Part shown: positions 1,712 to 59,122 of the stretch, piece after piece | How positions within the stretch are numbered: the first letter of the stretch is position 1 | Layout of the letters: every line of letters starts with the position of its first letter | NCBI GenBank assembly: GCA_047495785.1 | Contig: JBLDXI010000006.1 | Span: forward strand, 186,001-250,000 | Reading direction: 5' to 3' | DNA length: 64,000 nucleotides | Source: Lepidodermella squamata | Taxonomy: Eukaryota > Animalia > Gastrotricha | The notes under the pieces: model-generated | Told to the model about the DNA's origin: nothing | Seen by the model: only the letters and a program-made list of their open reading frames with translations | The model's database searches: none | Position numbers and translations under genes: made by a program

Positions 1712-1960
1712 ACTAGTGAAAAACAGCAAATGAGCGAATGGCTTTGTATCATTTTGGATACACCGATAATGAAATACAGTATAATGCTAATGAAAAACAT
1801 TCCGCAATCCCAACATCCTTAATTTCGATGAATCACCTAGCTTTGTTTTAGCGTAATGTTCGCTTCTACCCTCATAAAGTTTTTTACTTGAAAATCATTT
1901 ATCGATAGAAAATATCAATGGTGAGTGAAATTCTCGCCGTTACTTTTTACTCAGTCGGCG

Positions 1961-12726: not shown

Positions 12727-13672
12727 CAACCTTCGCATTTTACTTTTCTAGCCTAACAACTAAGAACTACGAACTATGATATTAGGTTCAGAAATGAAAT
12801 AAAACAGCGAAGACTAACTTTATAAGTGTTATACGTCAAATTGGTCGAGTCACAGAGTGAAGTAAGACAACAGAAATGGCTAGGATTAGGACTAAGTTCC
12901 TACTATCCGGCGCTCTCTGAGCCGAGTTTTGAAACCTCGCAAGCTTGATAGTTCAAACCTCAATATGTTCCAGCGATCAATTAATCCTTTACAAGCCTCC
13001 GCATTACGTTGATCAGTTTGAGCAGTGATTCATAATATAATGCGTAATGCGGAGCCAGCGAAATGACCAACGGACCGTAGATAACGAGGCGCATCTATTT
13101 CGGCTAATTGTCTGTGTCCGATTGACAGTTTGCATAGATTAGATTACTTTGCATTAAGACAAACATTTCATGTCCCAATGTTGCTTGATTGATATGGGAA
13201 TAAATGTGCACATTTCCTCCGAATATAACGAGAAACATCCGTGTCTTACAGGCGGAAAACTAGATTAACGGAGGCAATTGTCATTTCAAACCTAATCCAT
13301 ATAATTGATTACTTAGCTACAGTTAATTCAATTTCAGTATTACAGTTTGTGACGCAGCATGATGCTTCAATCAAAGCTGTATTTACTTCGAACCACCTAC
13401 GCCGCCACCTGGAAACGTCTACGTCTGTTTGATGCTCGTGACTGCGTTTCTTGAATTTGATGGCGGAAGTTGGTTCTCTTGATGAAAAATTTCTCTTCCC
13501 CGGACGGCTGAAGCTAAGTGCAGTTATGACAATGTGATGGCGTAGACGGCGCATCCGCTGTTGCAAAATACAAAAAGCTTGAAAAAAATAAACAGATAAG
13601 CCGCTTCATAACATCTATTGCACTATAAAAGCTTGGACTTCGATTGAATTATCAATACAATTGTTGCCAAAA

Positions 13673-16168
13673 ATGTGGGAAGTGATTATTTTACTCATAT
13701 CAAGCTGTGGCGTTATGTTATGCTCGAAGCAATTTACCTTGAAGATACCGATGAATGCCCCGATAGGCGGTCCTGTGAATCCTATGGGGGCTGTTTGCAC
13801 TGAGGCTGTAACGATGGCTTTAGACGCTATCAATTCAAGCCCTGACATTCTGCCTAACTACAAAATCCAAATTGACATGGGCGATGATCAGTGCCTATCA
13901 ACTGCCGCGCAGGAAATGAGCCTAAACTTTTACAACAACCTGAAACCGGTTGTTCCAAGCGCGAAAGTTTTCGGCAATCTAACCCTGCCACTTCGGACAA
14001 ATTTCTCCGGCGAAGCTTATGTTCCTCCTATATTTTTAGGAGGACTATGCTCCCCTACATGCAAAACAGCATCAAGGTTACCACAGCACTTCGGGTTCAT
14101 GAATATTCTTATCGGTTGCACTGAGCCTCAGTTTACGAATCGCAAGCTGTACCCGAACTTCTATCGATTCGCCCCATCTTTCGTTGAAGTTGAGAAATTT
14201 CGAGCTAAGCTGATGCTCTACCTCGGCTGGAATCGCATGGGCTATCTAGCAGATGCTGTTCAAACAACTTATGACGACGCCATCTATTTCGCGAAGGCAA
14301 TCCTCGGGGCTGGGAAGAAAGTAGCTGCGGAGGAGTTTTACATGGACGACGCGGGTATGTTTGAATCCCTAGCTAGGATGAAAGCAGCTGATGTCAGGGT
14401 AATCTACGGCAACTGTTACGTCAATTTCTGCCCAGCTATGGCATGTGAGGCTTACCGAAAAGGCCTATGGGGGCCTAACGTAGTTTGGATCTTCAATTCA
14501 TGGATTGATGTAGTCAACGGAATTCTCCCACCAGGCTGCACGAGAAGAATGGTCCAGGAATTTGCGGAGTATTCGCTGTACATCGGACCCGACTTTATGG
14601 CGAATTCTCAGCCTAGGAGCTACAAAACTGAAATAGGCATAACTTTCAAGCAGTTTGATGATTACCTATCCACGAAAGTGCCTAACCTTGAGACCCATCC
14701 AGCGTTTTCTTGGCGAATCATTTGCTTCGATGACGTTCTCATCGGAGCCAAAATCCTTCACAACGCCGAACTGGAATTAAACGAACGTAACGAGACGCTG
14801 AAAGACATAATCCGAGATGAGAGAAGGAAAGGAGAGTTAACCGACCTTATTCGCGAGAAGTCTATGACGGTCGAAGCTAACGGAATTTATGGTAACGCCG
14901 CGTTTCTACCCGGAGGTGATGAAGCGATAAATCCGCCACTTATTGTCGAACAGCTGTTCGAGGGCATCCGAAGCACGGTTTTGATCACTAGAAATCGAAG
15001 CATTACAGATCCACAGAAATATTTCGAAAAAATGGCACCGTTGAGATGGAAGAAAGCCAAGCCGAATACGGAACCTCTTGTCGCTCATAGGAAGAACGTT
15101 GTCGCGAGTCAAACTGTCAGTGGGTTGATAGCTGCAACAGCGATTATCGTCTGCCTAAAATGGTTCCTACAACTCGTTGGATTCATGCTCAAGGTCACAA
15201 ACACCTTTGATACCTTGATATGCCTGGGCTCCACTATGATGGCTACTGCTGTGTTGATTCACCCGATTGAAGGCTCGAATCTTCGGGGGTTGGGTATCTT
15301 TTGTACTGCAGTCGGTCCCCTGACCATTTTCGGCTTTGGTCTGATAACAACAGCGATTGCAGTGAAGCTATGGAGCTATCGTTACGTTGAGGCGGAAAGG
15401 AATACACCACTCCACAAAGCGATGATTGTCGTTGCGTTGTTGATTGAAGCCTGTTTAGTTCAGACTTGGTATCTCGGAGAATCAAAACCCCAAGCTTCAA
15501 TGATTTCGAAAACGTACTACGAGGCTGAAATTGACACTGTGTGGAATGAGCACACCTACTTGTGCACTTTCATCGATGAGGATACTAGCCCAAAAGCAGC
15601 TTTGGCTCTCCTTGGTTTTCAAGGTCTCCTTCTGACTGTAGCATTAATTCTATCGATTAGCTCCACTCGGAGACGAGGAAGGCAATCCTCATCAGGCCGT
15701 ACAACTTTTAAAACAAGGCTTAGGGCTCAGCCTAGAACAACCAGAGTTCGGCCACGAGTTAACCCTTCTTCTGCTGGTGAAATGGGGAGTAACACCAAGT
15801 TAACTTTGGAAGATTTTCTCTTGAATCAGGAGGTCAAAAACACGGCATTAGCTCTATACATACCGACATCTCTGCTTCTCCTATGCGCTTTTGCCTACTC
15901 AGTATTTGCTGATTCGCCAGCTGGCTTAATTGGAACTCTCTCAGCATTCACATTAGTTACATCGGTGTCGATGACCTTCATCCTGCAATGGCGCACGATC
16001 AAAGTCTCAATGTGGAAAATGGGCTACAAACGATTTGAGATGAACAACTTTATGACGGCTAACGAGGGAAGGATAGAATCTATCGATCGCAGCTCTTCTA
16101 TTTTGTCTGGTGGGAACCTTGGCGGAATCAGCACTGGAAATATGTTTCCGAGAGATAATGACCAGTAA
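13673..16168 (+). CDS. Intronless class C GPCR, GABA-B-like
   Basis: Signal peptide MWEVIILLISSCGVMLC; VFT motifs MALDAINSSPDILPNYKI, DDQC and FTNRKLYPNFYRF; C-terminal 7TM. Confidence 0.88.
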   Translation: MWEVIILLISSCGVMLCSKQFTLKIPMNAPIGGPVNPMGAVCTEAVTMALDAINSSPDILPNYKIQIDMGDDQCLSTAAQEMSLNFYNNLKPVVPSAKVFGNLTLPLRTNFSGEAYVPPIFLGGLCSPTCKTASRLPQHFGFMNILIGCTEPQFTNRKLYPNFYRFAPSFVEVEKFRAKLMLYLGWNRMGYLADAVQTTYDDAIYFAKAILGAGKKVAAEEFYMDDAGMFESLARMKAADVRVIYGNCYVNFCPAMACEAYRKGLWGPNVVWIFNSWIDVVNGILPPGCTRRMVQEFAEYSLYIGPDFMANSQPRSYKTEIGITFKQFDDYLSTKVPNLETHPAFSWRIICFDDVLIGAKILHNAELELNERNETLKDIIRDERRKGELTDLIREKSMTVEANGIYGNAAFLPGGDEAINPPLIVEQLFEGIRSTVLITRNRSITDPQKYFEKMAPLRWKKAKPNTEPLVAHRKNVVASQTVSGLIAATAIIVCLKWFLQLVGFMLKVTNTFDTLICLGSTMMATAVLIHPIEGSNLRGLGIFCTAVGPLTIFGFGLITTAIAVKLWSYRYVEAERNTPLHKAMIVVALLIEACLVQTWYLGESKPQASMISKTYYEAEIDTVWNEHTYLCTFIDEDTSPKAALALLGFQGLLLTVALILSISSTRRRGRQSSSGRTTFKTRLRAQPRTTRVRPRVNPSSAGEMGSNTKLTLEDFLLNQEVKNTALALYIPTSLLLLCAFAYSVFADSPAGLIGTLSAFTLVTSVSMTFILQWRTIKVSMWKMGYKRFEMNNFMTANEGRIESIDRSSSILSGGNLGGISTGNMFPRDNDQ

Positions 16169-21221: not shown

Positions 21222-23693
21222 TCACAAAGGTAGAGGGGTTGTTTTTCGATACGCCATTCTTTCCCAGCCCGTTCTAACCAACGGGTAGAAAAACGTGAAT
21301 GACGTCACAGCCGACATAGCTAGACACCCGAATGCGATAACAATTTGCTGTTTAACAGGCGATTGTACAACAACGATGACTAAAATTGTCGCCATTAACA
21401 AAATGGCTGCGTTGTTAGTCGCGTATTTGATGCAGAGGTGCTCGGGGCACTCGACATACCGCGCAGTTTGGCTAATTTGATACAAGCACAGGACAGCTAC
21501 GCCTAGGATTAGCAGATGTAAGAAGCTGATGGCGAGCACCCACGCTAGGTTGTGCTTCGACCGGCAATACGCAACCGATGTTTCGATGTAGGTATCAATT
21601 TCAGGAAAATAAGCCGTCTCATCTTCGACCAGGGTTTTAAAGCATTTCAGCGGATCACACAACAGCCAAATACCGACGATGATCACCTTGATAACAATGA
21701 ATCCTACCGCCCCTCCAGCGGCGACTTTATCGGTTTCTAGCAGGATATTACCGGGCATACGAACCGGGCCGCAAGAGGTGTCTGGCCGTTCCTCGGGGCT
21801 CTGAACCCTTAGAATGGTCAAATCTTGCGGCAAAACTGGCACCGGGTTAACCAGGATTACACTGTTCCTAGGCGGCGGGAAGGCTAATCGGAACTTTGTT
21901 GTTACTCGATCAGCCGGTTTCCGTTTCAGCTCGGTCATATGCATGGTAGGGAGGTTGCGTATCTGAAAATTCCGCATCTCCCCCGATACAGTTAGCACTC
22001 TCAAAGCAAGTATGCTGTAGACAAATTCCAGACCGGAAGCGAGTGACACAATGCGTAGGACCCAAGATTGGAATGGAGCTACTGAAGTCGGCATGGCGAA
22101 TGCGACAGCAGCTGCGTCAAGTAACAGACACCCGACGTAGCCGAGGCACTTCGAGCGTGGGAAATAAAATTCTTCCTTCCGTCGTAACCGCAATGTCACG
22201 AAAAGTGACGCAAGCTGCAGCAGACCTAGAGCGATCGAGATCGAGTAAACTGACTTGAAAATGTCCTCCCCAACCTCCGTAGTCACATTCAAAACCCGAC
22301 GCCTGTCATTAGGCGGTTTCCCCTTCCAATCAGTCCAGTTGAATCTCATGTTTGAAACTGAGATAAAATTGCGAAATTCACTCGCATCCGTATCTGACTT
22401 GTGCAGAGTCTTTTGAATGGAGAATAAAGACCTCGTCTTAGGGTTGTAGTAAGATATTGTTCCACCATCCGCATTCAACTGGCCGTATTTGTTGTACCTC
22501 AAAGGGCCGATTCTCAGGCCATTAACCGTGGAATTTGCAAGGGTTTCATTCACAATTCTCGCAATAACATTAGGTTGTTTCGGGTAATCTCTGAGAGATA
22601 AATTTCGAGAATTCAATACCTTCTCCGACTGGTCGAGGGTAATGAGGCCTTTAAGGACTGTATCATGACAAAGAACTCGGAAATCGTAATCACCTGGCCT
22701 GGAGTAATTAAGGTAATTACGATCGAGATAATCGTCAAATTGCCTCATCGTGTAATTAAGATGGCTTTTTACGCCATCGTCATAGCTCATTAGCAATGGT
22801 CCGACCCAAAATACGTATTTAAATTGTTCGAGAATCGTCGCGCGTGGGCAACCGGGTAAAACAGGGTCTGGTAGCTGCGCCGGATCTATGAAAACCACCG
22901 AGTTAACAATGAAAGCATAGCGAGGGCCTTTCAGGCCGTATTTATGGGCAAAACATAAAAATCCATAGATTAGCCGATCGGTCGACATGTAACTAACAAT
23001 GATTCGAGCATCACTCGCAATTAGACCAAGCATTGAATCTTCGTCAACCTCGAGTACAACATTGAAATACGAAATTTCGATTGAATTAGCAACGGCAGCT
23101 CTTTGAAGCACCAAAGCTGTAGTGTAGTCGTTAACATTCCCAGCATTTGTTAAAACAGCTATCTTTCGCCATGTGGGGATGTCTTTCAGAAAATGAACAA
23201 TAGTAAAAGCCAGGGTATTGCCGCCAGATAGCATTAGGTTCAAATTCGGGAATCTGTTCCGATCTAGAAGAATCGGAGCCGCGCATAAACTGCTAATTTC
23301 AACTTTGTTAAGGTGGTGTAAAATCGGCCCAACTGCCTTGCAGCCAGTCGATAGGTAAGGCCCGAGAACTATAGGGCTCTCATAGGTATTGTTCGACGCA
23401 TTTCCAAGCTCAAAAGTCCGGCCGAACTCGATGACGTGTCTCGGAGGCAATAGACCAAAACCCTCGTCTTCAAACGTCATTTCGACGGTAAAATCAGGCA
23501 AAATTTCGGCGTTTTGGTTGATTTTTGCGACGACGAAATCAGCTGCAGCTCGACACGCCTTGCCATTGTCCACCTTCAGCCCGCCGTATTGAACAATGTT
23601 CAGTATTTTAAGAATATTTGGCTTCACCAACTTGGACTCGGTAGCAGAGACATTTAAAACAAAAATTGGAAAGATTACAAAAAATATAAGCAT
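21222..23693 (-). CDS. Intronless class C GPCR, GABA-B-like
   Basis: 823-aa ORF with signal peptide, VFT motifs (KINQNAEILPDF, LLDRNRFPNL) and 7TM (WLLCDPL...YCRS). Shares lineage motifs with 2766-5126 (FLCFAH..G..GP.Y.F). Confidence 0.88.
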   Translation of the reverse strand: MLIFFVIFPIFVLNVSATESKLVKPNILKILNIVQYGGLKVDNGKACRAAADFVVAKINQNAEILPDFTVEMTFEDEGFGLLPPRHVIEFGRTFELGNASNNTYESPIVLGPYLSTGCKAVGPILHHLNKVEISSLCAAPILLDRNRFPNLNLMLSGGNTLAFTIVHFLKDIPTWRKIAVLTNAGNVNDYTTALVLQRAAVANSIEISYFNVVLEVDEDSMLGLIASDARIIVSYMSTDRLIYGFLCFAHKYGLKGPRYAFIVNSVVFIDPAQLPDPVLPGCPRATILEQFKYVFWVGPLLMSYDDGVKSHLNYTMRQFDDYLDRNYLNYSRPGDYDFRVLCHDTVLKGLITLDQSEKVLNSRNLSLRDYPKQPNVIARIVNETLANSTVNGLRIGPLRYNKYGQLNADGGTISYYNPKTRSLFSIQKTLHKSDTDASEFRNFISVSNMRFNWTDWKGKPPNDRRRVLNVTTEVGEDIFKSVYSISIALGLLQLASLFVTLRLRRKEEFYFPRSKCLGYVGCLLLDAAAVAFAMPTSVAPFQSWVLRIVSLASGLEFVYSILALRVLTVSGEMRNFQIRNLPTMHMTELKRKPADRVTTKFRLAFPPPRNSVILVNPVPVLPQDLTILRVQSPEERPDTSCGPVRMPGNILLETDKVAAGGAVGFIVIKVIIVGIWLLCDPLKCFKTLVEDETAYFPEIDTYIETSVAYCRSKHNLAWVLAISFLHLLILGVAVLCLYQISQTARYVECPEHLCIKYATNNAAILLMATILVIVVVQSPVKQQIVIAFGCLAMSAVTSFTFFYPLVRTGWERMAYRKTTPLPL

Positions 23694-24437: not shown

Positions 24438-27022
24438 CTAGGATCGTTGCGAATTAGCTAAATCAACCACGATTTGGTTATTTACAGGTAAGGGGGCGTC
24501 TTTCAACGAAGACGTCATGGTGACAGTTTGTTGCTGCCCCATTTGCAGTTGCTGGGCCAACTGACTAGCCGCAAGAGCTGCCTCCAACTCGTTCCCAGTC
24601 CCAGCAACCATAGCCTCAAGGGACGCTTTCCGTTGCGTCGCAGCTTCTTGTTGCCTGGCTACCTCTAACATTGCATTATGAACAGCAGGAGTTACGACTA
24701 GCAACGCAATGGTTGACGTCAGGGTTATGATGACGAACGCCCAGAATAGGATGCGGTCGACCGCCCTAGCTAAGGACTGCCATTCCCGTAGAGATCGCGC
24801 TGAATCCGCTTCAAGAGCGTATTGGCTGGTCAAACGGTCTATCGCATCGGCGATTTCTTCGTACAACCGCTGAATCCGGCTCGAACAGTTTGAATTGTAG
24901 GGCGGCATGTAGCCGTTGAGGCCAACAGCGTTCATAACTCGAGGCATCATCGACGGCGCGAAGGATTGGTACTTGGTACCGCCGATGCTTCGGATAGGCG
25001 AGCGGTGTTTGTTGAATTTGTTGAGTGAACCGAACTCACCGGCGTCTAACAGCTCTTCATTTTCGCTGTCGAAGAAGTGCTTATTCGCGTAGTCAACAAA
25101 CGTGTCCCTCGCTCGGTTTTTCTGCTGTTGGTGGTGGTTCAGCACGTACATTGACATTTCGCTCGGGTCTTCGAAGCCGGATGGCTGGAAACCGCGGTTC
25201 ATGTGCACGACCAATTCGTCGCGATGAGGCGTGGCTGAGGGTGGTGGAGCTGGTGGGAATTGGTCGTCGATTCCGCCGAACATCACCATGGACTTACGGT
25301 AACGAAGTAGGTTGTTCTCAACACGTCGTATGGCCTCATCTGCCGGGCTGATTTCTTGGCTTGCTTTCAGGTCTTCCTTATTGCAGAAACGGATTAGGAG
25401 TCGGGCGAACTTCGGGGGTCGCCGTTTGACACCCAATGATGGTCGGTAGTGAAGACTTAGGACAAGGACAGTGAGGCAGACGGAAATTGCTGACATTGAC
25501 ATGACAGCAGTGAGGTAGATTGAAATGAGAGGAATAAACTCTGAAAAATAGCATTAAGGAGGAATTTTTGTAAAAAATTCAAATTACTTACCGCTGGTTT
25601 CTGGGAGCTTTTCTGTCACGGAAAGCATAAACACGGAGAAAGAGAGGAGTACCGTGATTCCGAGCTGAAAATGGGCAATTTATTTCGAATGACTCCTCAT
25701 GTTGACTATGACTTACCGCGCATTTTTCTCCCGAATCTGGAGGTAGTAAGAAAGTGAGCAATGTTAGCGAAGACATGATGAAAGTTGGGAAAAACACGTT
25801 GAAGAGGTAGTAGAGCGTCTTGCGGCGCATGTTTATGTAGAAGGTCAGGTCGATGTAAGGCTCTTCGCAACAAGTGTATTTGACCACGTGGCGGACTTGG
25901 TACGCCGATAGCACGTCCCATTCTCCGTTTAGGACGAAGCGGCTCAAATCGACCTCGCCCACACGACCGTGTAGGTCGACCTTCCAGCCATCGTAAGTCC
26001 AACTTCCGAATTTCAATCGACATTTCTAAATTAAAAAAAGTGGGTCATTTTCTTAGAAAAATAAAAGATATAACCTAATTTATTATTCAAATTAAACAAC
26101 CGTAAAAATCGTGAATATTCAAATTAGTTACCTGAGTATCGAAAGGGAAATAGGTCACATCAATCTAAGGAGAAAATTTACGAATTATTTGTGTTTAATT
26201 ATTGGCTATAATCACCGTGCAAGAACTGTAAAGCTTGACCGGGACGCCTAGGAAAACATTCCCATCATGGCTGATCATCGCTCGAATATCGACAGGCTTT
26301 GTCGCATAATCAGCGGCACTGTTACCAAAAAAACATAGGATGATTGATGATTTTATTCCAAAGCTCACTTGTTATAAAGCACCTATGTGAAAAATTATCT
26401 CAATTAGGATGAATGCTGAAGAAATGTTATAAGCTTACGATATCAGGCGTCCAGATTCTACCGGCTGGTATTCGAATCGTGTAAATACCGCCAAATCTAG
26501 CCGGATCCCAGTTTAAAAATTCGTCGGTCTTGATCGGAAATAAAATCCATTAAATTCGTGAACAAATACTAAAATAACGACAAATACGTACCCACTCGTG
26601 ATCTATCCAGACATTTGTAATAAGCATTTGATTTTTCTGTTCGAAACAAATTAAAAAATTTAAATAAAACTCAAAAGTGATAAATTACCTCATCCAATTC
26701 GAATATTTGGTTAACAGCTAGTCCAAGCCCGATTTTAATGATCGTCGACGAATTTTTGACTGGGCGAGTTAGAGGGTTGTAGTGCCGAACTGTGGGAAGA
26801 GAATAAATTTCGAAATATTTAATAAATTTTTAAAATACTCACGAATTTCACACAGCAGTCTCTGCTCATCGGGTATCTAAAAATATCGCGAAAATTTCAG
26901 ATTTTTCGTCGAAAAAGCTTTGTTGTAGTTACCCTATCAGTGTTTCGAGTATCGCACGGGGCTGATGTGGCGATTTGAAAATTTGAAAAAACAGCGAATA
27001 AAATAGCTGTTACAAATAGCAT
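24438..27022 (-). CDS. Nicotinic acetylcholine receptor alpha-type subunit (multi-exon)
   Basis: Signal exon MLFVTAILFAVFSNFQIATS; WTPDI-VLYNNA; Cys-loop SSCT-IDVTYFPFDTQ-KC; GSWTYDG; loop C YTCCEEPY with vicinal cysteines; M2 LPPDSGEK..LGITVLLS; M4 VDRILFW. Confidence 0.92.
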
Positions 27023-32566: not shown

Positions 32567-33181
32567 TCCTCTTCTCACCGATCAGTCAATTTGCGCGCAC
32601 TGTCATCGACGAGCGCGGCTCTCCGGAGCTGGCCCGTGCGTTGTTGCTAATTTTTCTTGACTCTTAATTCATAAAATTTCTTTTATTACTGGCCAGGGTG
32701 CGAAGTACAGGGGTGCTGAGGTGTTGCGACACTCCATCTCTGGGACTTCAACCAGAGTAAGGCTGAAAAACAATAGGGGTACCATTAGGTTTCTTCAGCC
32801 TTTCTTCCGCTGGGTGCTAATAGAAAACAACTCAGCTCCCGGATCCTACTTCGCACACTGTTACTGGCCCTTCTGACGATTTAAGATTTACTACGATAAT
32901 TTACTGAGATTCTAACTCAATAAAAGATGTTTATTTTTCATGTTTTTAGGTTTCAACAAGATGAATTTGCTGGAATTGCTCCTCGCGACCTCAGCAAATC
33001 GGCCAAATCGATTTTGTTGTCGTAAATAACCCAATAATGAGCTAGAATACCTTTTTGCCCCTCTGACTAGCAACAGTCGAACTAATTCAATTACCTGCCC
33101 ATTCCCAGCCGCACACATCAAAGCCGTCCAGCCATGGTAATCTTTCCTGGGATTCACATCTGCTTCGCGATCCACGAACAG
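32567..33181 (-). pseudogene. Degenerate partial duplicate of the terminal ankyrin exon and 3' flank of the 33814-36544 gene
   Basis: DREADVNPRKDYHGWTALMCAAGNGQV matches DRGADVNSREDFYGRTVLMYAAGNDQV. Internal repeats are missing and the end is frameshifted. Flank 32567-32693 matches 33615-33730. Confidence 0.75.
32694..32860. mobile_element. 167-bp hAT-type MITE
   Basis: TIRs cagggtgcgaagta / tacttcgcacactg (13/14 match) and a perfect 8-bp TSD ttactggc (32686-32693, 32861-32868). The paralogous flank near 33725 lacks the insert. Confidence 0.88.
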
Positions 33182-33813
33182 TAGGATCGGCGTATTTCAA
33201 TTTACCCAAGCTTCTAAATGATACAGGCTTCTAAACGAGGGTAGGCTTATATTTCGGTACTACGGTAACTCGATTTATTAGGTCTTCCATTCGGGTGAAC
33301 CTCAGCGTCCGCCGCTATACAATCCCGTTAGCGTCTTCGACGTCGAAAGCCGCTGCCGTGTTCATGGTGTGGCGGGCTTCTTTGCGCAGTGGCTACGATG
33401 CTATGCTGCGAATGCTGCTCAGTTTGTCCCGCCTGTCGCCTCTGACCCCAAGCCGTTAACCCTTCGTACATCTTCCAACCTTTCTCGGTTAGCCCTCCGT
33501 CACTTTCTCTCTCTTTTCTTTATCCACTTGCTCCGTCTCTATGTGTTGCCTCCTCATGCCTCCAACCTTCCTTGCTATTGACAACCACTCTCCCTTTCCA
33601 CTCCCTCCACTCCACTCCTCTGCTCACCCATCAATGTATTTACGCGCACCGTTGTCAACGAGCGCGGCTCTCGGTAGCTGGCTCGCGGTTTGCTAGTATT
33701 TGTCTTGACTTTATTTTTTATTACTTGCCTTGACTGATGTTTTACTGAAGATGACAACACATTACAAATCCCAAAACGCAATAAAATATGTTCACGTTTT
33801 ATGGTGTTATGTT

Positions 33814-36544
33814 TCAACAAGATGACTTTGCTGGGCTTCCTCCTCGCGACCTCAGCAAATCGGCCACATCAGTTTTGTTATAGCAGATCGCCCAATCAAG
33901 AGCTGTCTTGCCATCTGAATCTCTGGAATCCCCATTTGCACCCCTGTCCAGCAGCAGTGGAACCACTTCGACTTGCCCAAACATGGCCGCGTACATCAAC
34001 GCCGTCACACCATTGTTATCCTTTCCCTCGATGGCAGCGCTGCGATCCAGCAGCAGTTCAACCACTCCAACGTGCCCAGTCTCAGCCGCATAAACCAACG
34101 CCGTTGCGCCATTGTTATTTTTAGCCTCAATGTCAGCGTTGCGATCCAGCAGCAGTCGGGCTACTTCCACCTGATCATTCCCAGCCGCATACATCAACAC
34201 CGTCCTGCCATAGAAATCTTCCCTGGAATTCACATCTGCTCCGCGATCCACGAACAGCTGAGCAATTTGCAATCGTCCATCTGATTGCGTTTGCCCGCAT
34301 GTTACGCTGTGCAGCAGGGTGCTATTTATCGCATACCCTGACCAATGCCGACCGCAGTCGTGCTTCTTTGGGTTGCGCCAGTTCGGGTCGAATTCGCCGC
34401 CAGTGGATTCGTCGATCACCGCAACGATTCGCCGCACTCGCGCCACGTCGTCCGTAAAGGCAGTAACATTCCACAACTGCTCGTAAACTTCAAAGATCTA
34501 AATGTAACAAACAGAAATCAAGCAATCTTGGATGGCATGGAATACAGAATTATGGGAATTCGCTTGAATTCCAATATCATTTCAGTTTTACTCTGATTCG
34601 ATTATTTGAGCTGTGTTGAATGACCGAATGGCTTCCTTTGGAAAACTTACAGGTCTTCGCTGCCTCGAGGCGCAAGAACCCGGCTGGGACCACGCTAAGT
34701 TGGAACGGCACGATATGGTAGAATTTCCTCGAATCTCGAAATTCAGGTTGCATGATATGCTTCGAGTGGCTCCGACGCTGGATAGGCCAGGAGATACGGA
34801 CCCGTTTCGTATCATAGGTAGCGGTCCACAGACTTGATACAACGATTTTGTTAGAAGAATCGACAATCACTTGAAAATGAGTCACCTGATGCTACGCAGC
34901 TCCCAGCCGCAGACCACCTGCCGTTTGCTTGGCATTGACTTGTTGCCTGGCCAATGAGCCCGAAACCGGGATTGCAGAACAATGTCACCGTGGACAAGTA
35001 CAAAGTTGATGTGTTGTTGCTCGTATAATATCCGTTACTCAGCTCAGGAGCAGGGCCGCAGTCTTTATCATACGCATAAGCTCTCTCTGATTGGGATACC
35101 CCGTTTTACTTACCTAATGGGTTGCATCTCCCATTTATCACCGGCCGAAATGGAGGTACGCACGTGGCGATCGAAACCGAGGACGAGTAGGTATAACCAG
35201 GGTCACATTTCACGCTAAGGGCTCCTCCTTTTTCCACTACAGTCCCATGCCTTAGAACTGCGCCGGTATCTTCCGAAGTTTCCGGGTCCACTCGGGTCAC
35301 AAATCCCGCAGATAGGTTGGGCACGGGGCAAGACTGATCTGGTGTGCTTGTCTGGCTGCGAACATCTGTGTTTTCCGAAATCCAATCGAGAACCTTGCAG
35401 ACTCTGCTATATATACCAGGCACGTACCCACTGCACGACACATCGCCGTTGGAAATTATGCCAAGTAGGTAAGTCTGACTGGATTTCAAACACATTAGAG
35501 GGCCCCCGGAATCTCCGAAGCAAACGTCACCATCATCGGCAGCGAAACACATTTTCGAGTCGGTGATGGTGACCGGATTCAATCGGCCGCGTGAATATTC
35601 CATTGAGCAATTTTGGTACGATCGAACTTGAAGATCCAGTTTCCTTGGAATCTCAGATAGTCTGGCTAAAACACGAGAGAGCAATCAGGAAAGGAAGCGG
35701 GAGGACAAGGGCGCAACTGAGGGGAAGGGGATAGGGGGCTCCCTAGCTGAAAAAAATCCACTCGAAATACCTGGTCCGAAATCCGAAAATCCTAAAAAAT
35801 GATGTGCTAGCCCCACCCAAGGGGGGCCCCCTGGCTGGAATGATGGAGAATCACGAAACATACTGTGTGAAAAGTAACCCCATCCGACCGCGACCGCTGA
35901 ATCGCATCCGTCGATGGAATTGGCGGTTAAAGGGTTGGTTTTGCACATTGTACTAGCGTCAGGTAAACAAATCGGCATGATCTGCTGTGACAATCTAGTG
36001 ACTGGGCTCAATAGGCGCAAGAGAGCGAAGTCAAAGTCGTAGAAATTCTGACTCCCGTTGTAAAGTGGATGCACCAAAGGAGGCAGCGACACGACAGATT
36101 CGTAAGAGCCCGCCTCCGAACGAACACTGATATTATGGCGACCTAATAGCGCTTTGATACTGTGCAAATGAAAAATATACCATCGAACAGATAAATTAAC
36201 AATCTCGCGTACAAAATGGGGGTCTCTCCTGCATTCCAAACACAATGAGCAGCTGTAATTAGCCATTGCTTCGAGATGAGGGAAGCTCCGCAGTAAGACG
36301 CTGAGGATTCGCCGCTTCTGTAAATCTCGAGGAAGACCTATAGCAACATCCTGTTTGTGTTGGATAGCATCAATATTGAATGGAAACGAACAAGCCATGG
36401 GTATTCGTTTGGTACTGCTGGATGGCTGCCAGGGCCTCGCGATTTCGCCATAGACGCAGGGTTCACAGCACCGCATTCTTGAGCAACGACTGCTCCGGAT
36501 ACCAGCACAAGGAAGGCAATTGTAAAAACCACCAGAGGTCGCAT
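33814..36544 (-). CDS. Secreted trypsin-like serine protease - 3x Sushi/CCP - ankyrin repeat fusion (7 exons, 722 aa)
   Basis: Exons 36544-36392, 36337-36213, 36159-35864, 35665-35114, 35062-34886, 34832-34651 and 34497-33814 are all GT-AG and phase-consistent. TAAHC, DFALL and GDSGGP are intact, followed by three CCP-like 4-Cys modules and about 4-5 ANK repeats. Confidence 0.85.
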
Positions 36545-37065
36545 TTCGACAAGTTTACAACAAAAGTTGAGGTACAGCTACCAGCAAAGGCTTGATAAAA
36601 CCTTCTTCGCCGTGTTCATTAAGGTAAAACATGCTTTAAAGTGTATTTTTTAACAGTTTTTTTCGTGTGTTATATTTTATTTGTAATGTTGACGAGCAAC
36701 CTGTATTTGAAGGATTGACAAATTTTGACGCATAGCTAAAACGCTAAAACGTGGCGCTTTCAAATGATGTGTGCTGTGTGTTTGAGATATTGAGTTCAAT
36801 AAACCTGAGGCGGCGATCAGCAAAGTAGTTCTTGACTCTTTTCGAATTGATGCAGATAATATTAGGGAAGGTTTGTGCGACATCCCATTCTGAGAGATTT
36901 AGTTTCAGCACTTGACAGGCTGTCCATCCCGAAACAAGTGTAGTTTTAATATACTTCACTTCTCAGAAATGTATTCTCAATTTACTTCGAGTTAATTTTG
37001 CAGCAACTGAACAGAAAATGGGTGAGAGTTGTAAATCATTAAAACAAATGGACATCAGCGGCTAA

Positions 37066-39404
37066 TCATGTGCCATAATACTGCGTTCCTTGTAGATTCT
37101 CAAGCGCTGACTTGGCGATGTGCTGATCGTAACTCAAGGCTTCCTCCATTATTGCCTTGTGGAATGCACCAAACAGCGGTACGACAATGAGGGCGAGCAG
37201 ACACATGCCAAACCCGATCCAATTAACCGCATAGGCCAGGTACCAAGCACTCTTCGATTGCGCAAGCCGCCTGCCGCTTTCGCTCTTACGGCCATCTTCT
37301 TGCTGGTTGTCTTTCCTAATGGACCCAGAAGAATTTTGCTTCTTGATCTGCCGGTTTTTCGCTGACATGACGCGATGGATTTTCAGCGTAGATCTAGCCC
37401 GGATTGAGTTGTTGCGAGGCGATCGTGATTGATTGCTAGTAACGTGGGAAATACAGTCTTCGAACTCGTCGCCATTGCTCAAAACGTCTACAACAGCGTC
37501 CTCGCTCAAACACCGGCCGTTCTGGATGGCAGCAGCCCGCGTACGGAGGCGGGCGTGGAAACCGGGGAAAAGGCGTTTTGTAATGAAATTAAACACCTCC
37601 GGAATACCCCACGGCGCAGAGATGAACTCCCCTGGATCGACAATTGCTAGACAGATGGTTGTCACGAGAATAGTCATCGCGGCCGCGCAGAGTATGACGG
37701 TGAGATAAATTGTTAGGTAGCAATTCGCCGAGTTCTTCGGCAGTTTCTCCGCGACCATCAGCTCGAACAGGGCGACGGCAGTGAGAGTTGTCACTGATTG
37801 GACGGGCCGATCTACGTAATGCACGGGCACGAGGTAGTTTAGCAGGGTTATCACAGCTAGAAGAATCGTAGGCAGCACGACGGTAAGGACGAAGAATGCG
37901 GATCTACGGCGCATGACTAGCACGAAATGGATGCGACTGAAAGCCGTCCGTTCCCCAGTTCGATAAGTTGCAGAATGGCCGCCCACGCCATCGGATACCA
38001 GCTCCCAGACCTCTATAACAGATAGCTTTAACATGAATCATGCCAAGGAGAGGGCAACCATACCGTTCTCAGCAAGCATGCCCAGAGAGACTGCAGCAGG
38101 TTGATCGTCAGCTCGTATTGCTAGGCGCAGTTCGCGTTCTTGGAATATCGCTGATTCCTAACGGTAACGTAGCCATCAATGAAAATTGAGTAGAGCTAAT
38201 CAATAATATACTATTATAATTGAGCATCGTTGAATGTCGTATGGAAAGAAAGTGTGGTCGAATTTGCAGCGTGTTGAGATTTTACCGGTAGGATGGTACC
38301 AAACGTTGCCTAGAAGAAGAATATCGGCATCAATTTTTGAAAGTTGGGTTTAAGGAATCGCTTACCATCACTGTGCAGCCGGTATGGAAAGGAAGTGTCA
38401 CGCAATAAATCGTCCATGCCGTCGATTGCATTTGAGATCTGCATTGGAGGAATCCATAACATTTCTTTCGGAACGACTATTTCTTTGACTCCGCCGAACT
38501 GTTGAGGCGACCATGCGATCAAAGGATCACGCCAAGTCTAATAAAATATAAGGCACACATAATATTGAGGAAGGCAGTGAAGGCGAGAGTAATTTCGAAT
38601 TTTCAATTAATTTTGAATATTCACAAACAATTCTCAAATCGAAATCTGTTCACTGATTTCATCTTTCATCCCGCGCTTTTGCCGATTTTTCACATAAAAA
38701 GTAATGAATGTTTAAGGAAAACTGTAATCAAACATACAAGCTGTAGCCGAATTGTGGCATGCATTGTTTCGGTGGCCTCGTCCAACTCCTGAACTCGAAT
38801 CAAATAGAGGCGACTTCTCACGACCAGCGTGTTGTTGATGCTCAACGGGTTCATCGGTTTCACAAATTTGTTGTAGCCACCAGCTGCCGTCAGCCTTTTC
38901 AGTAATTCGTATTCAGGTACCTTGGATTTCGCTTCAATGATTAAATAAATTTCAAAATATTAGGACCATTAAGATCAGAAGAGATCTGAACGTTGTTGTT
39001 TGCATAAAGAAAATCAATAAATTCTACTTTCTATTCTAAATTAGCATTAGCTTAATTTGAGGCTTTCATTAATAATTGTTATTACCCTGGTACCATGGGC
39101 TAATAAGAAACATTTTCAATTAAATGTTCAGTGAAGTCACCTATAGGTAATAAGCTACAGTAACAGGTTACCTATTGGTAACAATCGATGGGTGAAAAAT
39201 TGAGATTCTAGGAAATCGTTTTTTTGAAAAATCGTGTGCCGCTGGAGTCTCAAATTGAGCTAATAAATGAATAGAATAAAAATTAAGGGATATTTTTTTA
39301 CCTGAGATGGCGTAGCGTATTTGATCACCGCTGTCCATCGATTGACAGCGACAGGTGTCGATTAATTGGAGCAGTAGGGTGACTAAAAACCCCGAGGCCC
39401 TCAT
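37066..39404 (-). CDS. Divergent Cys-loop ligand-gated ion channel subunit (non-alpha), copy 1
   Basis: Signal exon MRASGFLVTLLLQL; LWIPPMQISNA; Cys-loop CKFDHTFFPYDIQRC; MRRRSAFF-M1; M2 DRPVQSVTTLTAVALF; M4. No vicinal cysteines. Confidence 0.85.
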
Positions 39405-55038: not shown

Positions 55039-57178
55039 TCAGCGCGCTCGCGCACTATTTTGACGCAAAATCATTGATAATATAAAATTATGAATTAATA
55101 CAGAAAACACGCTATTGATGTAAAAATTATTTTTGAGACATTTTGAATTTTCGCGCTCCATATTACGGTCCTGAGCCAACCAATCAGAATCCTCGACAAA
55201 ATTGAACTTACAGCTGGTTCTACAATCATGGAATGGATGATGAGCAGCCATTACATGGGATGTAGTAGATTCAGTCGTAGTAACAGCCTGAACGATGGCT
55301 TCTTCTTCGTCCCCAACCGAGTCATCGATTTCCGCAGCTGCTGAATTGTAGTCGAACGCCGAGAAATTATAAATTGATTGTGATCTATATTTTGGCTCTG
55401 CGGCATCCAAGGCGATCAAATAGGCAGACATATCAGCTTCGTCAGCTCCTTTTATCAGTAATAGTTCAACCATGTCTTGTCTCGAAAGCTGCCTGGCTAA
55501 TGTAAGAGCTGTTTGACCGCCTTTAGAGCGAAATCCTAAATCAGCCCCATTTTCGATTAGCAATTTGACCATTTCAATGCTCCCTGATTCAACGGCCTCC
55601 ATCAGAACCGAGTATCCGCGGTGAGAAGTCGAGCTGACATTAGCCTTATGACGGAGCAAGAGCTTCGTAAAATTGAGGTTGCCGTTCTTCAGAGCTGTAA
55701 CAAATGCCGAATCGCCCCACTCCGGTTTGAAGTTGACCTCAAGCTCGCTAAAATTGTCATCTGCAACAATCTCATTTACGAAGTCGTCGTCGTTATTCTC
55801 AATAGCCATAACCAAAACGGCGCGATGGCTCCTGTAATCTAATTTTTCTCCTTTAGCTTTTCTGACCAGCAGTTTTATCATGTTGTAATCATTTATGTTC
55901 AAAGCTAGGGCCATCGCACCTCCATAACCTGTGTAGGCCCCAAGTTCCCCAAGAAGTTCAACAATGTCGAAATTGCCATTTTCGACAGCGGCAGCTAACA
56001 GGTATTCTCCAGACTTGGCATTCACCTTCGCGCCATTTTCTACAAGTTTCCGGATAGAATCTGTGTCGTTTCTGTTTACTGCTTCAAACAGGTCCAGGTT
56101 GAGGTAGGTTTTATTTCCCACTCGATCGATCAGAAATTCGATCATCTCGACGTATGGATCCTTCTGTGACTTGGCGATCCCAAGAATACTCCGACCAAGG
56201 TTGTCTACAATGTTGGTTTTAGCTCCATTTTCGAGGAGAAATCGCAAGATCTCGAAATGTTTCTGCACAACAGCTATCATCGCAGCCGTTCGGCCATTTT
56301 CATCTCTATCATCAATATCCGCCCCACTCTTGACTATAAGCTTGACCATCTCTAGATTTCCGTTGCAAACAGCGGCCTTTAGCGGAAAATCGCCCTCCAG
56401 ATCGATGATATTGATATCAGCCCCATTCTCGATGAGCAGCCTAGTCGTCCTTATAGAATCAGCTTGGACAGCTTTGATCAAAGCGGACTGGTATCTCTTA
56501 TTTTTCTGGTTGATATTTGCCCCGTTTCGGAGCGGCAGTTTAACAACGTGATAGTAATCTCTGCCAGCTACATCCATTAAGAGGCTATTTTCCTCATAAC
56601 CAGGGGCTGAATTTATGTCCGCTCCTTTATCGATCAGCAACTGAAGGATTTCGGTGTAGCTTTCCAATAAACTCTCCGAATAATACATTTTCGCAACCGC
56701 AACATGTATCAGGGGCGTCTTGCCATTGTTAATTATCGATGGAAATTCGAAATTCGGGTCGAATCGGTCTTCAGTAGCATTATTTATGGCATCAATAACA
56801 TTTCGAGTCGATTCAACGCTTGTTACTTTGTTAAATTCACGGTAAATGTCATAAGTTGCCTCTGATACCTAAAAAATCAATCATTTTACTGTTAGTTGGG
56901 CTGGTTAGTGGCATTCCACTTTTTACCTCACATGGCTTGCTTGAGGGATTCCAGCGTCCTTTGACACAAGTTAAATTTAGAGGCGGTTTCCATTTGTAAC
57001 CTGGTGGGCATTCGATGGTTACAGTTGAATTTCCAAAAACTTCCGTTCCGGTAGGAAGAGTTCGATTGTTCGATAATTCGTAGAATATTTTGAATGGATC
57101 ACTCACAACGCATTTCACATTTGCACGAGCATTTAGGAGGGCTACCTCCAAAAAGAGCAGCAGCAGAAAAAACTTCAT
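55039..57178 (-). CDS. Signal peptide - Sushi/CCP - multi-ankyrin-repeat protein
   Basis: Exon 1 (57178-56927) encodes MKFFLLLLFLEVALLNARA plus a C..CPPGY..C..GRW..PC sushi. A 58-bp phase-0 intron (56869-56926) leads to exon 2, which is open into the 549-aa ANK ORF (roughly a dozen repeats) and an acidic/Thr-rich tail. The 3' end is uncertain (possible donor at 55211). Confidence 0.82.
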
Positions 57179-57917: not shown

Positions 57918-59122
57918 TTAATTAGGCTTGACGACAGCCCAGGAGACGTCGGTCTCGATACCACAGATGTTCTTGCCCTTGGGGATGCGGAAGTAGCCAG
58001 CCTCACCTGGAATGATTTATCAAATAATCATATAATTCGCTTGAAAAAAGGTGAAAACATACCCCAGGAGCAGCCCCAGCTGTTGCGGACGATCCAGTAG
58101 TCACCATCCTTAGCATTGCGGCCATAGCCAACGATGACGACGGCGTGGGTGGTGTCAGTAGCCAGAACGTTGGAACCGCACATCTCCCCCTTGAAAATGC
58201 CACTCTTGTAGGCGAAAAAGTCATCACCCTTCTTAACCTTGATGCCAACGTTGACGGGGCCACCACGGAGAGCATCCTCAATCGACTTGATGCTGATATC
58301 AGGCTGACTTGGGTGCCACTTCTGTAGTTGGCCGACAGCGAGAACAGTGAAGCCCTTGGCATCAGCAGACTTGACATTGCAGCTCTGGAGAATAGCGGCG
58401 TAGGGGTAGGAAGCAGGGCCGTTGTAGCCGGTCCTCTTGGTCTGGAAATAGTCATAGACACCAACGGCGCTGCCTCCGTCGCAACCGTTGTTGTACTTTC
58501 CCAGGGAGCAGTCGACAATCTGCTGCTCAGACATGGGCACGGCCCTGGTCTGGCCGGTAGACAGGGCAAGACGGGTTTCCAGCTCGGCGATGCCACCGAA
58601 AGCGTAGCAGGAACCGCACTTCTTCTGGTTCTTGATCGGCACCATAACGCAACGCCAGTCGACAATTACGCCGTCGTACTTCTGATACGGAAGGATGGTG
58701 TTGTCCTCGTTGGTAGAAACCTGGCGGGCGTAGGCGCGAGCAGCGGGATGAACGAACTGCTCGACCGACGGGATCATCGTGGCGTTGGGAGCCTCGATCG
58801 GTTTCTTGGTAGCGAAATACGCGAACTGTTCTTCGAAACTGTCGTGGCAGTTCTCGTTCAGGCCATACTCGACGTCGTTGTCCTTCTTGTCAAACAGGTG
58901 AGCTTGGATCGCGTTCTTGATGACGTCAGCCTGGGCAGCCTTGTGCTCAGCGAGACTGTCGATATCCTTCGGCAGAGGGAACTCCTCGGCGAATTTGTCG
59001 TAGATGGGATGACAGCCTTCGAAGGGCTTGTCGGCGGTTACAGCGGATTGCGAGGCTGCATCCTCAGCGAAAACAGCGCTCAGAGAAGCAGCGGCGAATG
59101 CCACCAGAATGAAACGAGCCAT
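57918..59122 (-). CDS. Papain-family (C1A) cathepsin-L-like cysteine protease
   Basis: Signal peptide; NQKKCGSCYAF, SEQQIVDCS, GCDGG, THAVVIVGYG and RNSWG. Intron 58007-58062, then GEAGYFRIPKGKNICGI...*. Confidence 0.92.

What the first reader, a model, noticed from the sequence alone, without database searches (positions are those of the whole stretch)
33814..36544. Secreted trypsin-like protease fused to three Sushi domains and ankyrin repeats
Seen: seven phase-consistent GT-AG exons give SP - protease (His, Asp and Ser motifs intact; Asp at the 189-equivalent in DVCFGDSGGP) - 3 CCP - ANK. The last junction, RQRRP|IFEVYEQLW (intron 34498-34650), is exactly in frame. Established: in C1r/C1s, MASPs and factor B/C2 the CCPs lie N-terminal to the protease, and ankyrin repeats are overwhelmingly intracellular. 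Inference: an inverted complement-like protease that uses an ankyrin array as an extracellular targeting module, for immunity or as a venom/digestive effector.
Basis: partly seen in the sequence, partly recalled or inferred. Interest (0 to 1): 0.85.

Follow-up and report, generated by a model that had tools for sequence, protein, structure and literature searches.

The report
Secreted protease fused to ankyrin array
An unidentified small animal genome carries an intact gene, one of about forty copies, that joins an export signal, a trypsin-type cutting enzyme and two or three Sushi modules to ankyrin repeats, a binding module that normally works only inside cells; here the repeats carry cysteine caps and sugar-attachment sites, as if adapted to work outside.

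Summary
Seven GT-AG exons on the minus strand (36544-33814) give an open 722-aa frame. It reads: signal peptide, chymotrypsinogen-like propeptide, S1 protease (His57/Asp102/Ser195 and Asp189 intact), one weak and two clear Sushi/CCP modules, a basic linker, then an ankyrin exon.

No RNA data exist for this organism, so the last splice is inferred, but the comparative evidence is strong.
- About 47 protease paralogs occur in the same 121-Mb genome. Of the 21 I fetched, 19 have the same order on one strand.
- In all 20 junctions read, the last CCP exon ends at a phase-0 GT donor with no stop. The ankyrin exon starts at a phase-0 AG and has no usable ATG of its own.
- The only poly(A) signals lie after the ankyrin stop.
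- Both halves are under purifying selection.

The ankyrin exon looks adapted to the secretory pathway. It has four invariant cysteines, two in each cap, whatever the repeat number. It keeps conserved N-glycosylation sequons and has no membrane span.

"Complement-like" is not supported: the protease is closest to chymotrypsinogen. The function, most likely target-directed proteolysis, is inferred.

The family-specific cap has no relative among 1.84 billion representative proteins. The scan has already noted this family several times on other DNA of the same genome.

The parts
36392..36544 (-). Exon 1: start codon, signal peptide (residues 1-21, ending VVA|QE) and a chymotrypsinogen-like propeptide (ECG..NP..AKSR followed by GPGS)
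   Evidence: It is the only hydrophobic segment of the protein. The propeptide and the 'KSR-GPGS' site are conserved in about 20 paralogs.
36213..36337 (-). Exon 2: start of the protease domain with His57 (LITAAHC) and the Cys42-Cys58 pair
   Evidence: Pfam Trypsin at 31.8 bits. AAHC is conserved in 23 of 24 paralog exons.
35864..36159 (-). Exon 3: middle of the protease domain with Asp102 (DFDFALLRL), the Cys122 equivalent (PICLP) and Cys136
   Evidence: Pfam Trypsin at 26.6 bits; motif context; PICLP conserved in paralogs. The donor lies at 35864.
35114..35665 (-). Exon 4: C-terminal half of the protease (Asp189, Gly193, Ser195 in DVCFGDSGGP; SNG at 214-216) and a divergent CCP-like module (four Cys, no Trp)
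   Evidence: Pfam Trypsin at 60.4 bits. Sushi reaches only 17.7 bits, below the cut-off. Best solved relatives are chymotrypsin A/B. There are 47 near-full-length paralogs at 58-89% identity.
34886..35062 (-). Exon 5: CCP2, a phase 1-1 exon
   Evidence: Pfam Sushi at 42.1 bits; phases.
34651..34832 (-). Exon 6: CCP3 plus the basic linker SRQRRP. It starts in phase 1 and ends in phase 0 at a GT donor (CCT|gtaagt)
   Evidence: Pfam Sushi at 38.5 bits. The donor position, phase and basic linker are conserved in 19 of 20 paralog junctions.
34498..34650 (-). Intron 6 (153 nt, GT..AG). If it were retained, the frame would stop after 20 more codons. It holds no poly(A) signal and no usable alternative first exon
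34258..34497 (-). Exon 7, first part: the family-specific N-cap. It has two helices, a variable loop and one degenerate repeat, with invariant Cys48 and Cys67 and conserved sequons (NVT, NST). An in-frame TAG lies directly upstream of the acceptor, and there is no ATG
   Evidence: (120 matches in the genome).
33814..34257 (-). Exon 7, second part: four canonical ankyrin repeats including the C-cap (TALDWAIC..NKT), the tail ending in a C-terminal Cys, and the stop codon (33814-33816)
   Evidence: Pfam Ank at 113 bits. AlphaFold2 pLDDT 93.7. Foldseek finds DARPins at TM 0.75-0.78. Cys205 and Cys227 are invariant.
33710..33722 (-). Two overlapping AATAAA poly(A) signals about 95 nt after the stop. 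They are the only ones between the start codon and this point
32912..33180 (-). Decayed, frameshifted relic of the 3' part of an ankyrin exon (one repeat, C-cap and the ..SRGAIPANSSC tail). It is not part of the gene
   Evidence: 83% and 69% nucleotide identity to two parts of exon 7.

Best explanation
This is an intact, long-maintained member of a lineage-specific family of about 40 genes. Each gene encodes one secretory-pathway mosaic protein built in this order:
- a signal peptide and a chymotrypsinogen-type propeptide;
- an S1 serine protease with a trypsin-like (Asp189) pocket;
- a stalk of one to five CCP modules;
- a short basic linker;
- a C-terminal ankyrin solenoid of four to about sixteen repeats.

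Shown:
- the exon structure and the domains;
- the intact catalytic residues;
- the absence of any membrane span;
- conservation of the CCP-to-ANK splice junction and of both halves across paralogs;
- the fixed four cysteines and the conserved sequons of the ankyrin exon.

Inferred:
- The ankyrin exon is spliced onto the protease-CCP exons in the mRNA.
- The ankyrin array is folded in the ER, disulfide-stapled at both caps and glycosylated, then exported. This parallels the Cys-rich caps of extracellular leucine-rich-repeat proteins.
- The array's variable concave surface binds a target and so directs or anchors the attached protease.

The biological setting (defence, digestion, gland secretion, self-recognition) is unknown.
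For: Gene model and domains.

The join:
- 19 of 21 fetched protease paralogs carry SP-Trypsin-CCP(1-5)-cap-ANK in that order on one strand.
- From coordinates, about 20 of the other 26 protease exons have a cap exon within 5 kb downstream on the same strand.
- In all 20 junctions read, the last CCP exon ends without a stop at a GT donor. In 19 of them that exon is the CCP3 type. The ANK exon starts just after a pyrimidine tract and AG, and both sides are in phase 0. Intron length varies from 90 nt to 5.3 kb.
- A TAG lies directly upstream of the acceptor, and the first ATG is about 100 codons inside the ANK exon.
- The only AATAAA signals follow the ANK stop.

Selection:
- omega is 0.17 for the protease and CCP1, 0.35 for the cap and 0.45 for the C-cap.
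- dS between this gene and its paralogs is 0.5-0.9 in both halves.

Secretory adaptation:
- One N-terminal hydrophobic segment only.
- Most ANK exons have exactly four Cys whether they are 224 or 623 aa long, at invariant columns.
- Sequons are kept through residue changes, for example NVT/NAT/NVS in 19 of 21 and NGT/NGS/NST/NCS in 19 of 21.

Fold: pLDDT 93.7, and DARPins are the best structural matches.

Variability peaks at repeat positions 2, 3, 5, 10, 13 and 14, the canonical binding face. These positions give omega about 1.06 against 0.42 for the scaffold (only 7 pairs).

Catalytic motifs are conserved in all but one paralog.
Against: - There is no transcript or protein evidence. The only public run holding this DNA is a DNA run whose contigs run through the introns.
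- The residues after the presumed activation cut are GPGS, not the canonical I/V-V-G-G. Normal zymogen activation, and therefore activity, is uncertain.
- The disulfides are inferred from counts and conservation only; no coordinates were available to measure distances.
- The omega estimate for surface positions rests on 7 pairs with near-saturated dS.
- Protease and cap distances are only weakly correlated across paralogs (Mantel r 0.20, 573 of 5000 permutations as high). Co-inheritance of the two halves is therefore not demonstrated by phylogeny.
- 2 of the 21 fetched paralogs showed no ANK exon within 6 kb.
Confidence: 0.7

Rival explanations
1. The fusion is made but is a precursor. A proprotein convertase, or a family member itself (all have a trypsin-like pocket), cuts at the basic linker (RQRR) between CCP3 and the ANK cap. 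A protease-CCP protein and a free, capped ankyrin binder are then released and act separately.
For: The linker is basic in all paralogs (RQRRP, SQRRP, RLRRP, AKRRP, RRRRT, RQQRS and others). It sits exactly at the module boundary. The ANK exon is a self-contained, confidently folding unit with caps of its own. About 70-80 other cap-ANK exons in the genome are not next to a protease.
Against: The residue after the basic pair is usually Pro, which disfavours cleavage by furin-type and trypsin-type enzymes. Several paralogs lack a full R-x-x-R motif. The last codon may be constrained by the splice donor rather than by the protein. Nothing here tests cleavage.
Confidence: 0.12
2. The protease domain is not an enzyme in practice. 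Without an Ile16-type N-terminus it stays zymogen-like and serves as a binding or scaffold module. The protein would then be a purely adhesive or recognition mosaic.
For: GPGS replaces IVGG after the conserved KSR site in this gene and in nearly all paralogs. At least one paralog has lost His57 and Gly193 (AADC, FADSGGP). An earlier scan note describes dead-protease relatives.
Against: His57, Asp102, Ser195, Gly193, Asp189 and the five canonical disulfide pairs are kept in almost all paralogs. The protease half has omega 0.17. That is hard to explain if catalysis did not matter. Some S1 proteases are active without N-terminal insertion.
Confidence: 0.1
3. The ankyrin exon is not part of this gene's mRNA. 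The protease-CCP transcript ends in intron 6 (stop after 20 extra codons). The ANK exon would belong to another transcript or be an unused exon that travels with the protease gene during duplication.
For: No RNA data are available. Read-through of intron 6 gives an early stop. 2 of 21 paralogs have no ANK exon within 6 kb. A decayed ANK relic lies just downstream.
Against: - The GT donor with no stop at the end of CCP3 is conserved, while the read-through tails are not conserved and vary in length.
- The ANK exon has a conserved acceptor, an upstream in-frame stop and no ATG, yet it is under purifying selection.
- Intron 6 has no poly(A) signal and is too short for another first exon.
- The phases match in all junctions read.
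Confidence: 0.08

Closest known systems
Chymotrypsinogen A/B and other S1 (chymotrypsin-fold) serine proteases
   Same: Best sequence matches among solved structures for the C-terminal half. It shares the catalytic triad, the oxyanion-hole Gly, the canonical disulfides, and a short propeptide beginning with a Cys that can pair with the Cys122 equivalent.
   Different: Asp189, giving a trypsin-like pocket, in place of Ser189. GPGS replaces IVNG/IVGG after the activation Arg. There is one extra Cys pair. CCP modules and an ankyrin array follow the C-terminus.
Complement and clotting mosaic proteases with CCP modules (C1r, C1s, MASPs, factor B, C2; horseshoe-crab factor C)
   Same: A secreted S1 protease combined with Sushi/CCP modules in one chain. 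These are modular, phase-1 exon-shuffled genes.
   Different: In those proteins the CCPs lie N-terminal to the protease (established knowledge), whereas here they lie C-terminal. No CUB, EGF, vWA, LCCL or lectin domain is present. The protease is nearer to chymotrypsin than to these. None of them has ankyrin repeats.
Toxoplasma rhoptry-neck protein RON9
   Same: A secretory-pathway protein with a signal peptide that combines ankyrin repeats (six) with a Sushi domain (PMC3299665). It is the clearest published precedent for ANK and Sushi behind a signal peptide.
   Different: It comes from an apicomplexan, not an animal. It has no protease, one Sushi, a predicted C-terminal membrane span and PEST repeats. 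No cap homology is known, and it is not a large family.
Latrotoxins of widow spiders
   Same: Long ankyrin arrays in proteins that act outside the producing cell. This is the only setting in which 'extracellular ankyrin' turned up in the literature search.
   Different: They have no classical signal peptide, no CCP and no protease. They are pore-forming toxins and are unrelated in sequence outside the repeats (my own knowledge, not tested here).
Designed ankyrin repeat proteins (DARPins) and Cys-capped extracellular LRR receptors (e.g. lamprey VLRs)
   Same: DARPins are the best structural matches (TM 0.75-0.78). The natural family varies at the same positions that are randomised in DARPins. 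Like extracellular LRR proteins, the solenoid has Cys-bearing N- and C-caps and a variable repeat number.
   Different: This is an analogy of design only. There is no somatic assembly and no LRR fold. Binding has not been shown.

Membership tests
S1 serine peptidase (Pfam PF00089 Trypsin) | Profile match above the curated cut-off | tested here: met
   Exons 2, 3 and 4 score 31.8, 26.6 and 60.4 bits against a 20.6 cut-off.
S1 serine peptidase (Pfam PF00089 Trypsin) | Catalytic triad His57/Asp102/Ser195 and oxyanion-hole Gly193 | tested here: met
   AAHC, DFALL and GDSGGP are present and are conserved in paralogs, except one with AADC and FADSGGP.
S1 serine peptidase (Pfam PF00089 Trypsin) | Canonical activation: cleavage that exposes an I/V-V-G-G N-terminus | tested here: not met
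   The aligned position reads KSR|GPGS, which is conserved across the family. Whether and how the enzyme is activated is unknown.
S1 serine peptidase (Pfam PF00089 Trypsin) | Enzymatic activity | not testable with these tools
   This needs recombinant protein and a substrate assay.
Sushi/CCP/SCR module (PF00084) | Profile match above the cut-off, four Cys and a conserved Trp | tested here: met
   Exon 5 scores 42.1 bits and exon 6 scores 38.5 bits (cut-off 20.7). Each has four Cys and a Trp.
Sushi/CCP/SCR module (PF00084) | The same criteria applied to the first module (end of exon 4) | tested here: inconclusive
   17.7 bits, below the 20.7 cut-off (E 0.005). It has four Cys but no Trp.
Ankyrin repeat (PF00023 / PF12796) | Profile match and a helix-loop-helix solenoid fold | tested here: met
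   113 bits. AlphaFold2 pLDDT is 93.7 with paired helices every 33 residues. Foldseek matches DARPins and ankyrins.
Complement C1r/C1s/MASP or factor B/C2 type protease | CCP modules N-terminal to the protease, together with CUB/EGF or vWA domains | tested here: not met
   The CCPs are C-terminal and no CUB, EGF or vWA match was found. The nearest solved relatives are chymotrypsins.
Cap-ANK family of this genome (defined here) | N-cap (..VYEQLWNVT..FDPNWRNP..C..NGTLLHSVTC..), a C-cap ending in ..SSC, four invariant Cys, and a phase-0 acceptor after a CCP3-type exon | tested here: met
   The window gene has all of these features.
Secreted protein | A cleavable N-terminal signal peptide, with no membrane span or retention signal | tested here: inconclusive
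   By eye and by hydropathy: MRP, then a 17-residue hydrophobic core, then VVA|QE. No other hydrophobic segment is present and there is no KDEL. No signal-peptide predictor was available and there are no protein data.

The most novel reading that the evidence does not exclude
The roughly 120 cap-ANK exons of this genome, about 40 of them wired to proteases, form a natural extracellular ankyrin-based recognition repertoire. Each is a disulfide-capped, glycosylated solenoid of variable length with a hypervariable binding face. They would serve as germline-encoded binders for non-self or prey molecules, coupled to effector modules. This would be an ankyrin counterpart of the LRR-based receptors of jawless vertebrates and of laboratory DARPins.
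Probability: 0.25. Interest if true: 0.9.

Novelty: new variant of a known kind. Interest (0 to 1): 0.7.

Why it matters
Ankyrin repeats are textbook intracellular modules. The cytosol-type fold is thought to do poorly in the oxidising secretory pathway, which is one reason engineered DARPins are made in the cytoplasm. A large, selected animal gene family would change that picture if it routinely sends ankyrin arrays through the ER.

The family shows specific signs of such adaptation. Its arrays have their own cysteine caps and glycan sites, and some are coupled to proteases. This would show that the fold has been naturally adapted to extracellular use.

It would also offer ready-made design rules for secretable ankyrin binders. 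And it may reveal a new class of invertebrate recognition or effector molecules. The claim can be tested directly with one cDNA experiment and one secretome experiment.

Tried and rejected
**RNA evidence.** The look-up of sequencing runs found a single run of unknown kind. Laid on 32600-38400, its contigs run through introns and intergenic DNA, so it is a DNA run, probably the source of the assembly. No RNA run of this organism was offered.

**One joint near intron 6.** One search shows one joint (34492 to 34644, skipping 151 nt). It does not coincide with the intron (34498-34650, 153 nt). It has only 22 letters on one side and comes from a DNA run. I take it for a cross-match of a short contig from a paralog, not for splicing.

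**Relatives of the ANK exon.**
- The search for homologous proteins gave only generic, mostly bacterial or metagenomic ankyrin proteins. They reach at most 51% identity and mostly cover only the repeat part.
- A profile of the cap against 1.84 billion representatives returned only generic arrays. They match profile positions 45-93, the repeat-like end, and none matches the specific first half.
- Weaker cap relatives below the top 150 cannot be excluded.
- A scan of JGI metagenome contigs for the cap found none.
- ESM Atlas look-ups were uninformative.

**Bacterial origin of the repeats.** I considered this because the nearest neighbours are bacterial. I did not pursue it, because the databases are dominated by bacteria and consensus-like repeats converge.

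**Identity of the organism.**
- No COX1 is present in the assembly.
- A papain-like protease in the window has only 34% identity to anything.
- An intronless HSP70 is 73-78% identical to proteins of many animals, mostly molluscs, arthropods, tardigrades and frogs, and 83% identical to an unnamed metagenomic protein.
- It is therefore an animal with no close relative in the database, not named here.

**Co-phylogeny of protease and cap.** It is weak (Mantel r 0.20, not significant). The cause is probably near-saturated, star-like divergence.

Full report
**1. What is there**

I read the minus strand of 33000-37500 and assembled the exons by script. Seven exons bounded by GT..AG give a 2169-nt frame of 722 codons with no stop:
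- 36544-36392
- 36337-36213
- 36159-35864
- 35665-35114
- 35062-34886
- 34832-34651
- 34497-33814

Exon 6 ends ..SRQRRP at a CCT|gtaagt donor in phase 0. Exon 7 starts after ..ttacatttag| with IFEVYEQLW in phase 0. The intron is 34498-34650.

Pfam places domains as follows:
- Trypsin on exons 2-4.
- Sushi on exons 5 and 6.
- Ankyrin on exon 7.

The module at the end of exon 4 has four cysteines, but it reaches only 17.7 bits for Sushi, below the cut-off, and has no tryptophan. The protein therefore has two certain CCPs and one CCP-like module.

Other features of the chain:
- The N-terminus is a classical signal peptide: MRP, a 17-residue hydrophobic core, then VVA|QE.
- It is the only hydrophobic segment of the chain.
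- There are 28 cysteines, an even number. They fall into 12 in the protease part, 4 in each of the three CCP modules, and 4 in the ankyrin exon.
- There are ten N-x-S/T sequons.

**2. The protease**

- His57 (AAHC), Asp102 (DFALL), Ser195 and Gly193 (GDSGGP) and Asp189 are all present.
- The closest solved relatives of the C-terminal half are chymotrypsin and chymotrypsinogen A/B. HGF activator, tPA, plasma kallikrein and complement factor I follow.
- The stretch after the signal peptide (ECGAVNPASMAKSR) has the length of the chymotrypsinogen propeptide and, like it, starts with a Cys. A Cys sits at the 122-equivalent position (PICLP).
- The residues after the Arg are GPGS rather than I/V-V-G-G.
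- This odd site is conserved in the paralogs. It is therefore a family trait, not decay. It leaves the mode of activation, and strictly the activity, open.

**3. Is the ankyrin exon part of the gene?**

No RNA could be brought to bear. The one public run that holds this DNA consists of contigs colinear with introns and intergenic sequence, so it is DNA. The argument is therefore comparative.

- *Family size.* The same 121-Mb genome holds about 47 near-full-length copies of exon 4 at 58-89% identity. It holds 120 matches to the 80-residue N-cap of the ankyrin exon.
- *Order.* I fetched 20 paralog loci, which hold 21 protease genes. Nineteen of the genes show signal peptide, protease, one to five CCP exons, cap and ankyrin repeats in that order on one strand. 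From the coordinates, about 20 of the remaining 26 protease exons also have a cap exon within 5 kb downstream on the same strand.
- *Junction.* In all 20 junctions read, the last CCP exon ends at a GT donor and never with a stop. In 19 of them that exon is the CCP3 type, which shifts the phase from 1 to 0 and ends in a basic linker. The ankyrin exon begins directly after a pyrimidine tract and AG in phase 0. The intron varies from 90 nt to 5.3 kb.
- *Read-through.* Read-through tails differ in length and sequence.
- *No start of its own.* In the window gene a TAG lies directly before the acceptor. The first ATG is about 100 codons inside the exon.
- *Cap under constraint.* The cap is nevertheless conserved (68% mean column identity) and constrained (omega 0.35).
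- *Poly(A).* The only AATAAA signals between the start codon and the next gene lie about 95 nt after the ankyrin stop. Intron 6 has none, and at 153 nt it has no room for another first exon in the right phase.
- *Divergence.* Synonymous divergence from the paralogs is similar in both halves, 0.5-0.9.

I put the probability that the mature mRNA joins exon 6 to exon 7 at about 0.85-0.9.

**4. The ankyrin exon looks built for the secretory pathway**

- Of 27 paralog exons ranging from 67 to 623 residues, 15 have exactly four cysteines, and these span 224-623 residues.
- The four cysteines sit at invariant columns. Two are in the N-cap (exon residues 48 and 67), flanking a length-variable loop. 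One is at the end of the first helix of the last repeat (205). One is the very last residue (227).
- One paralog lacks both C-cap cysteines together.
- Sequons are kept while their letters change: NVT/NAT/NVS in 19 of 21, NGT/NGS/NST/NCS in 19 of 21, NQT/NRT in 12 of 21, and NKT/NET in the C-cap in 6 of 13.
- AlphaFold2 with a 13-sequence alignment gives one continuous solenoid (pLDDT 93.7, pTM 0.90). It has a two-helix N-cap, a hairpin-like loop of lower confidence, one degenerate repeat and four canonical repeats.
- The best structural matches are DARPins (TM 0.75-0.78 over about 215 columns).
- I could not measure Cys-Cys distances, so the disulfides remain an inference.

**5. Variation**

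- Across 87 repeat units, entropy exceeds 3 bits only at positions 2, 3, 5, 10, 13 and 14 of the 33-residue unit. This is the hairpin and first-helix face used for binding and randomised in DARPins.
- In the 7 equal-length pairs these positions give omega of about 1.06 against 0.42 for the scaffold. With so few pairs and high dS this is only suggestive.
- Repeat number varies from 4 to about 16.

**6. What it most likely does**

A secreted or lumenal trypsin-like protease is held on a CCP stalk. Its C-terminal capped ankyrin array binds a partner and thereby targets, anchors or regulates the enzyme.

Three variants cannot be excluded:
- The halves are separated by cleavage at the basic linker.
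- The protease domain works as a non-catalytic module.
- The protein acts inside a secretory or digestive compartment rather than outside the animal's cells.

Nothing here points specifically to immunity, venom or digestion.

**7. Comparison with what is known**

- It is a member of the S1 peptidase, Sushi and ankyrin families at domain level.
- It is not a complement-type protease: the module order is reversed, CUB/EGF/vWA are absent, and the affinity is to chymotrypsin.
- The combination of a signal peptide, ankyrin repeats and a Sushi domain has a published precedent in Toxoplasma RON9 (PMC3299665). Ankyrin arrays that act outside cells are known from latrotoxins.
- I found no paper describing a protease-CCP-ankyrin protein or a Cys-capped ankyrin family.
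- The family-specific cap has no detectable relative among 1.84 billion representative proteins or in JGI metagenome contigs.
- The architecture itself could not be queried in InterPro.

**8. Context and earlier notes**

The organism is an animal without close relatives in the protein database.

Earlier notes of this scan on other DNA of the same genome describe the same family. They mention secreted Sushi-ankyrin arrays, protease-CCP-ankyrin fusions, a dead-protease variant, paired cysteines and an RxRR linker.
- I took the cysteine idea from there and tested it on my own loci.
- I reached the junction, census, selection and database results independently.

**9. Verdict**

The gene is one ordinary member of an extraordinary family. 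The 'complement-like' label should be dropped. The extracellular ankyrin reading is well supported by sequence features but lacks RNA and protein proof.

Noticed in passing
window 32912-33180 (-): A decayed, frameshifted relic of the 3' part of a cap-ANK exon (one repeat, C-cap, tail ..SRGAIPANSSC) lies 640 nt downstream of the live gene. It is a sign of past local duplication.
   Followed up: partly
window 833-1729 (-): An ORF whose start (MIMLKLGFLFTATLFISVAAD..) looks like a signal peptide followed directly by ankyrin repeats of a different, TPLH-type family without the cap. It would be a second kind of putatively secreted ankyrin protein in the same window.
   Followed up: partly
window 55039-56688 (-): A 549-aa open frame of about 12 ankyrin repeats. 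My cap search did not match it, so it belongs to a different ankyrin lineage from the gene studied here.
   Followed up: partly
window 2766-5126 (-), 13661-16168 (+), 21222-23693 (-): Three long, apparently intronless ORFs (786-835 aa) with an ANF_receptor domain. The first also has 7tm_3. They look like a local cluster of class-C GPCR-like genes.
   Followed up: no
window 37066-38034 (-) and 24438-25502 (-): Two large last exons. The one at 24438-25502 matches the transmembrane part of Cys-loop ligand-gated channels in Pfam. The one at 37066-38034, directly upstream of the protease gene, had no Pfam match and only looks similar by eye. An AATAAA at 36681 probably ends that upstream gene.
   Followed up: no
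window 58028-59122 (-): A single-exon papain-family cysteine protease (Peptidase_C1, E 7e-46). Its best database relatives are only 33-39% identical, which shows how isolated this organism is.
   Followed up: partly
G000 contigs C4 (1.42-2.08 Mb), C64, C73, C42, C36, C81: Most protease-CCP-ANK paralogs sit in dense same-strand clusters, whereas the window's copy on C6 is a dispersed singleton. One paralog (L030, first gene) has lost His57 and Gly193.
   Followed up: partly
G000 (whole assembly): No COX1 match anywhere in the 151 contigs, so the mitochondrial genome seems to be absent from the assembly. There are at least four near-identical intronless HSP70 genes (C2, C12, C15).
   Followed up: no
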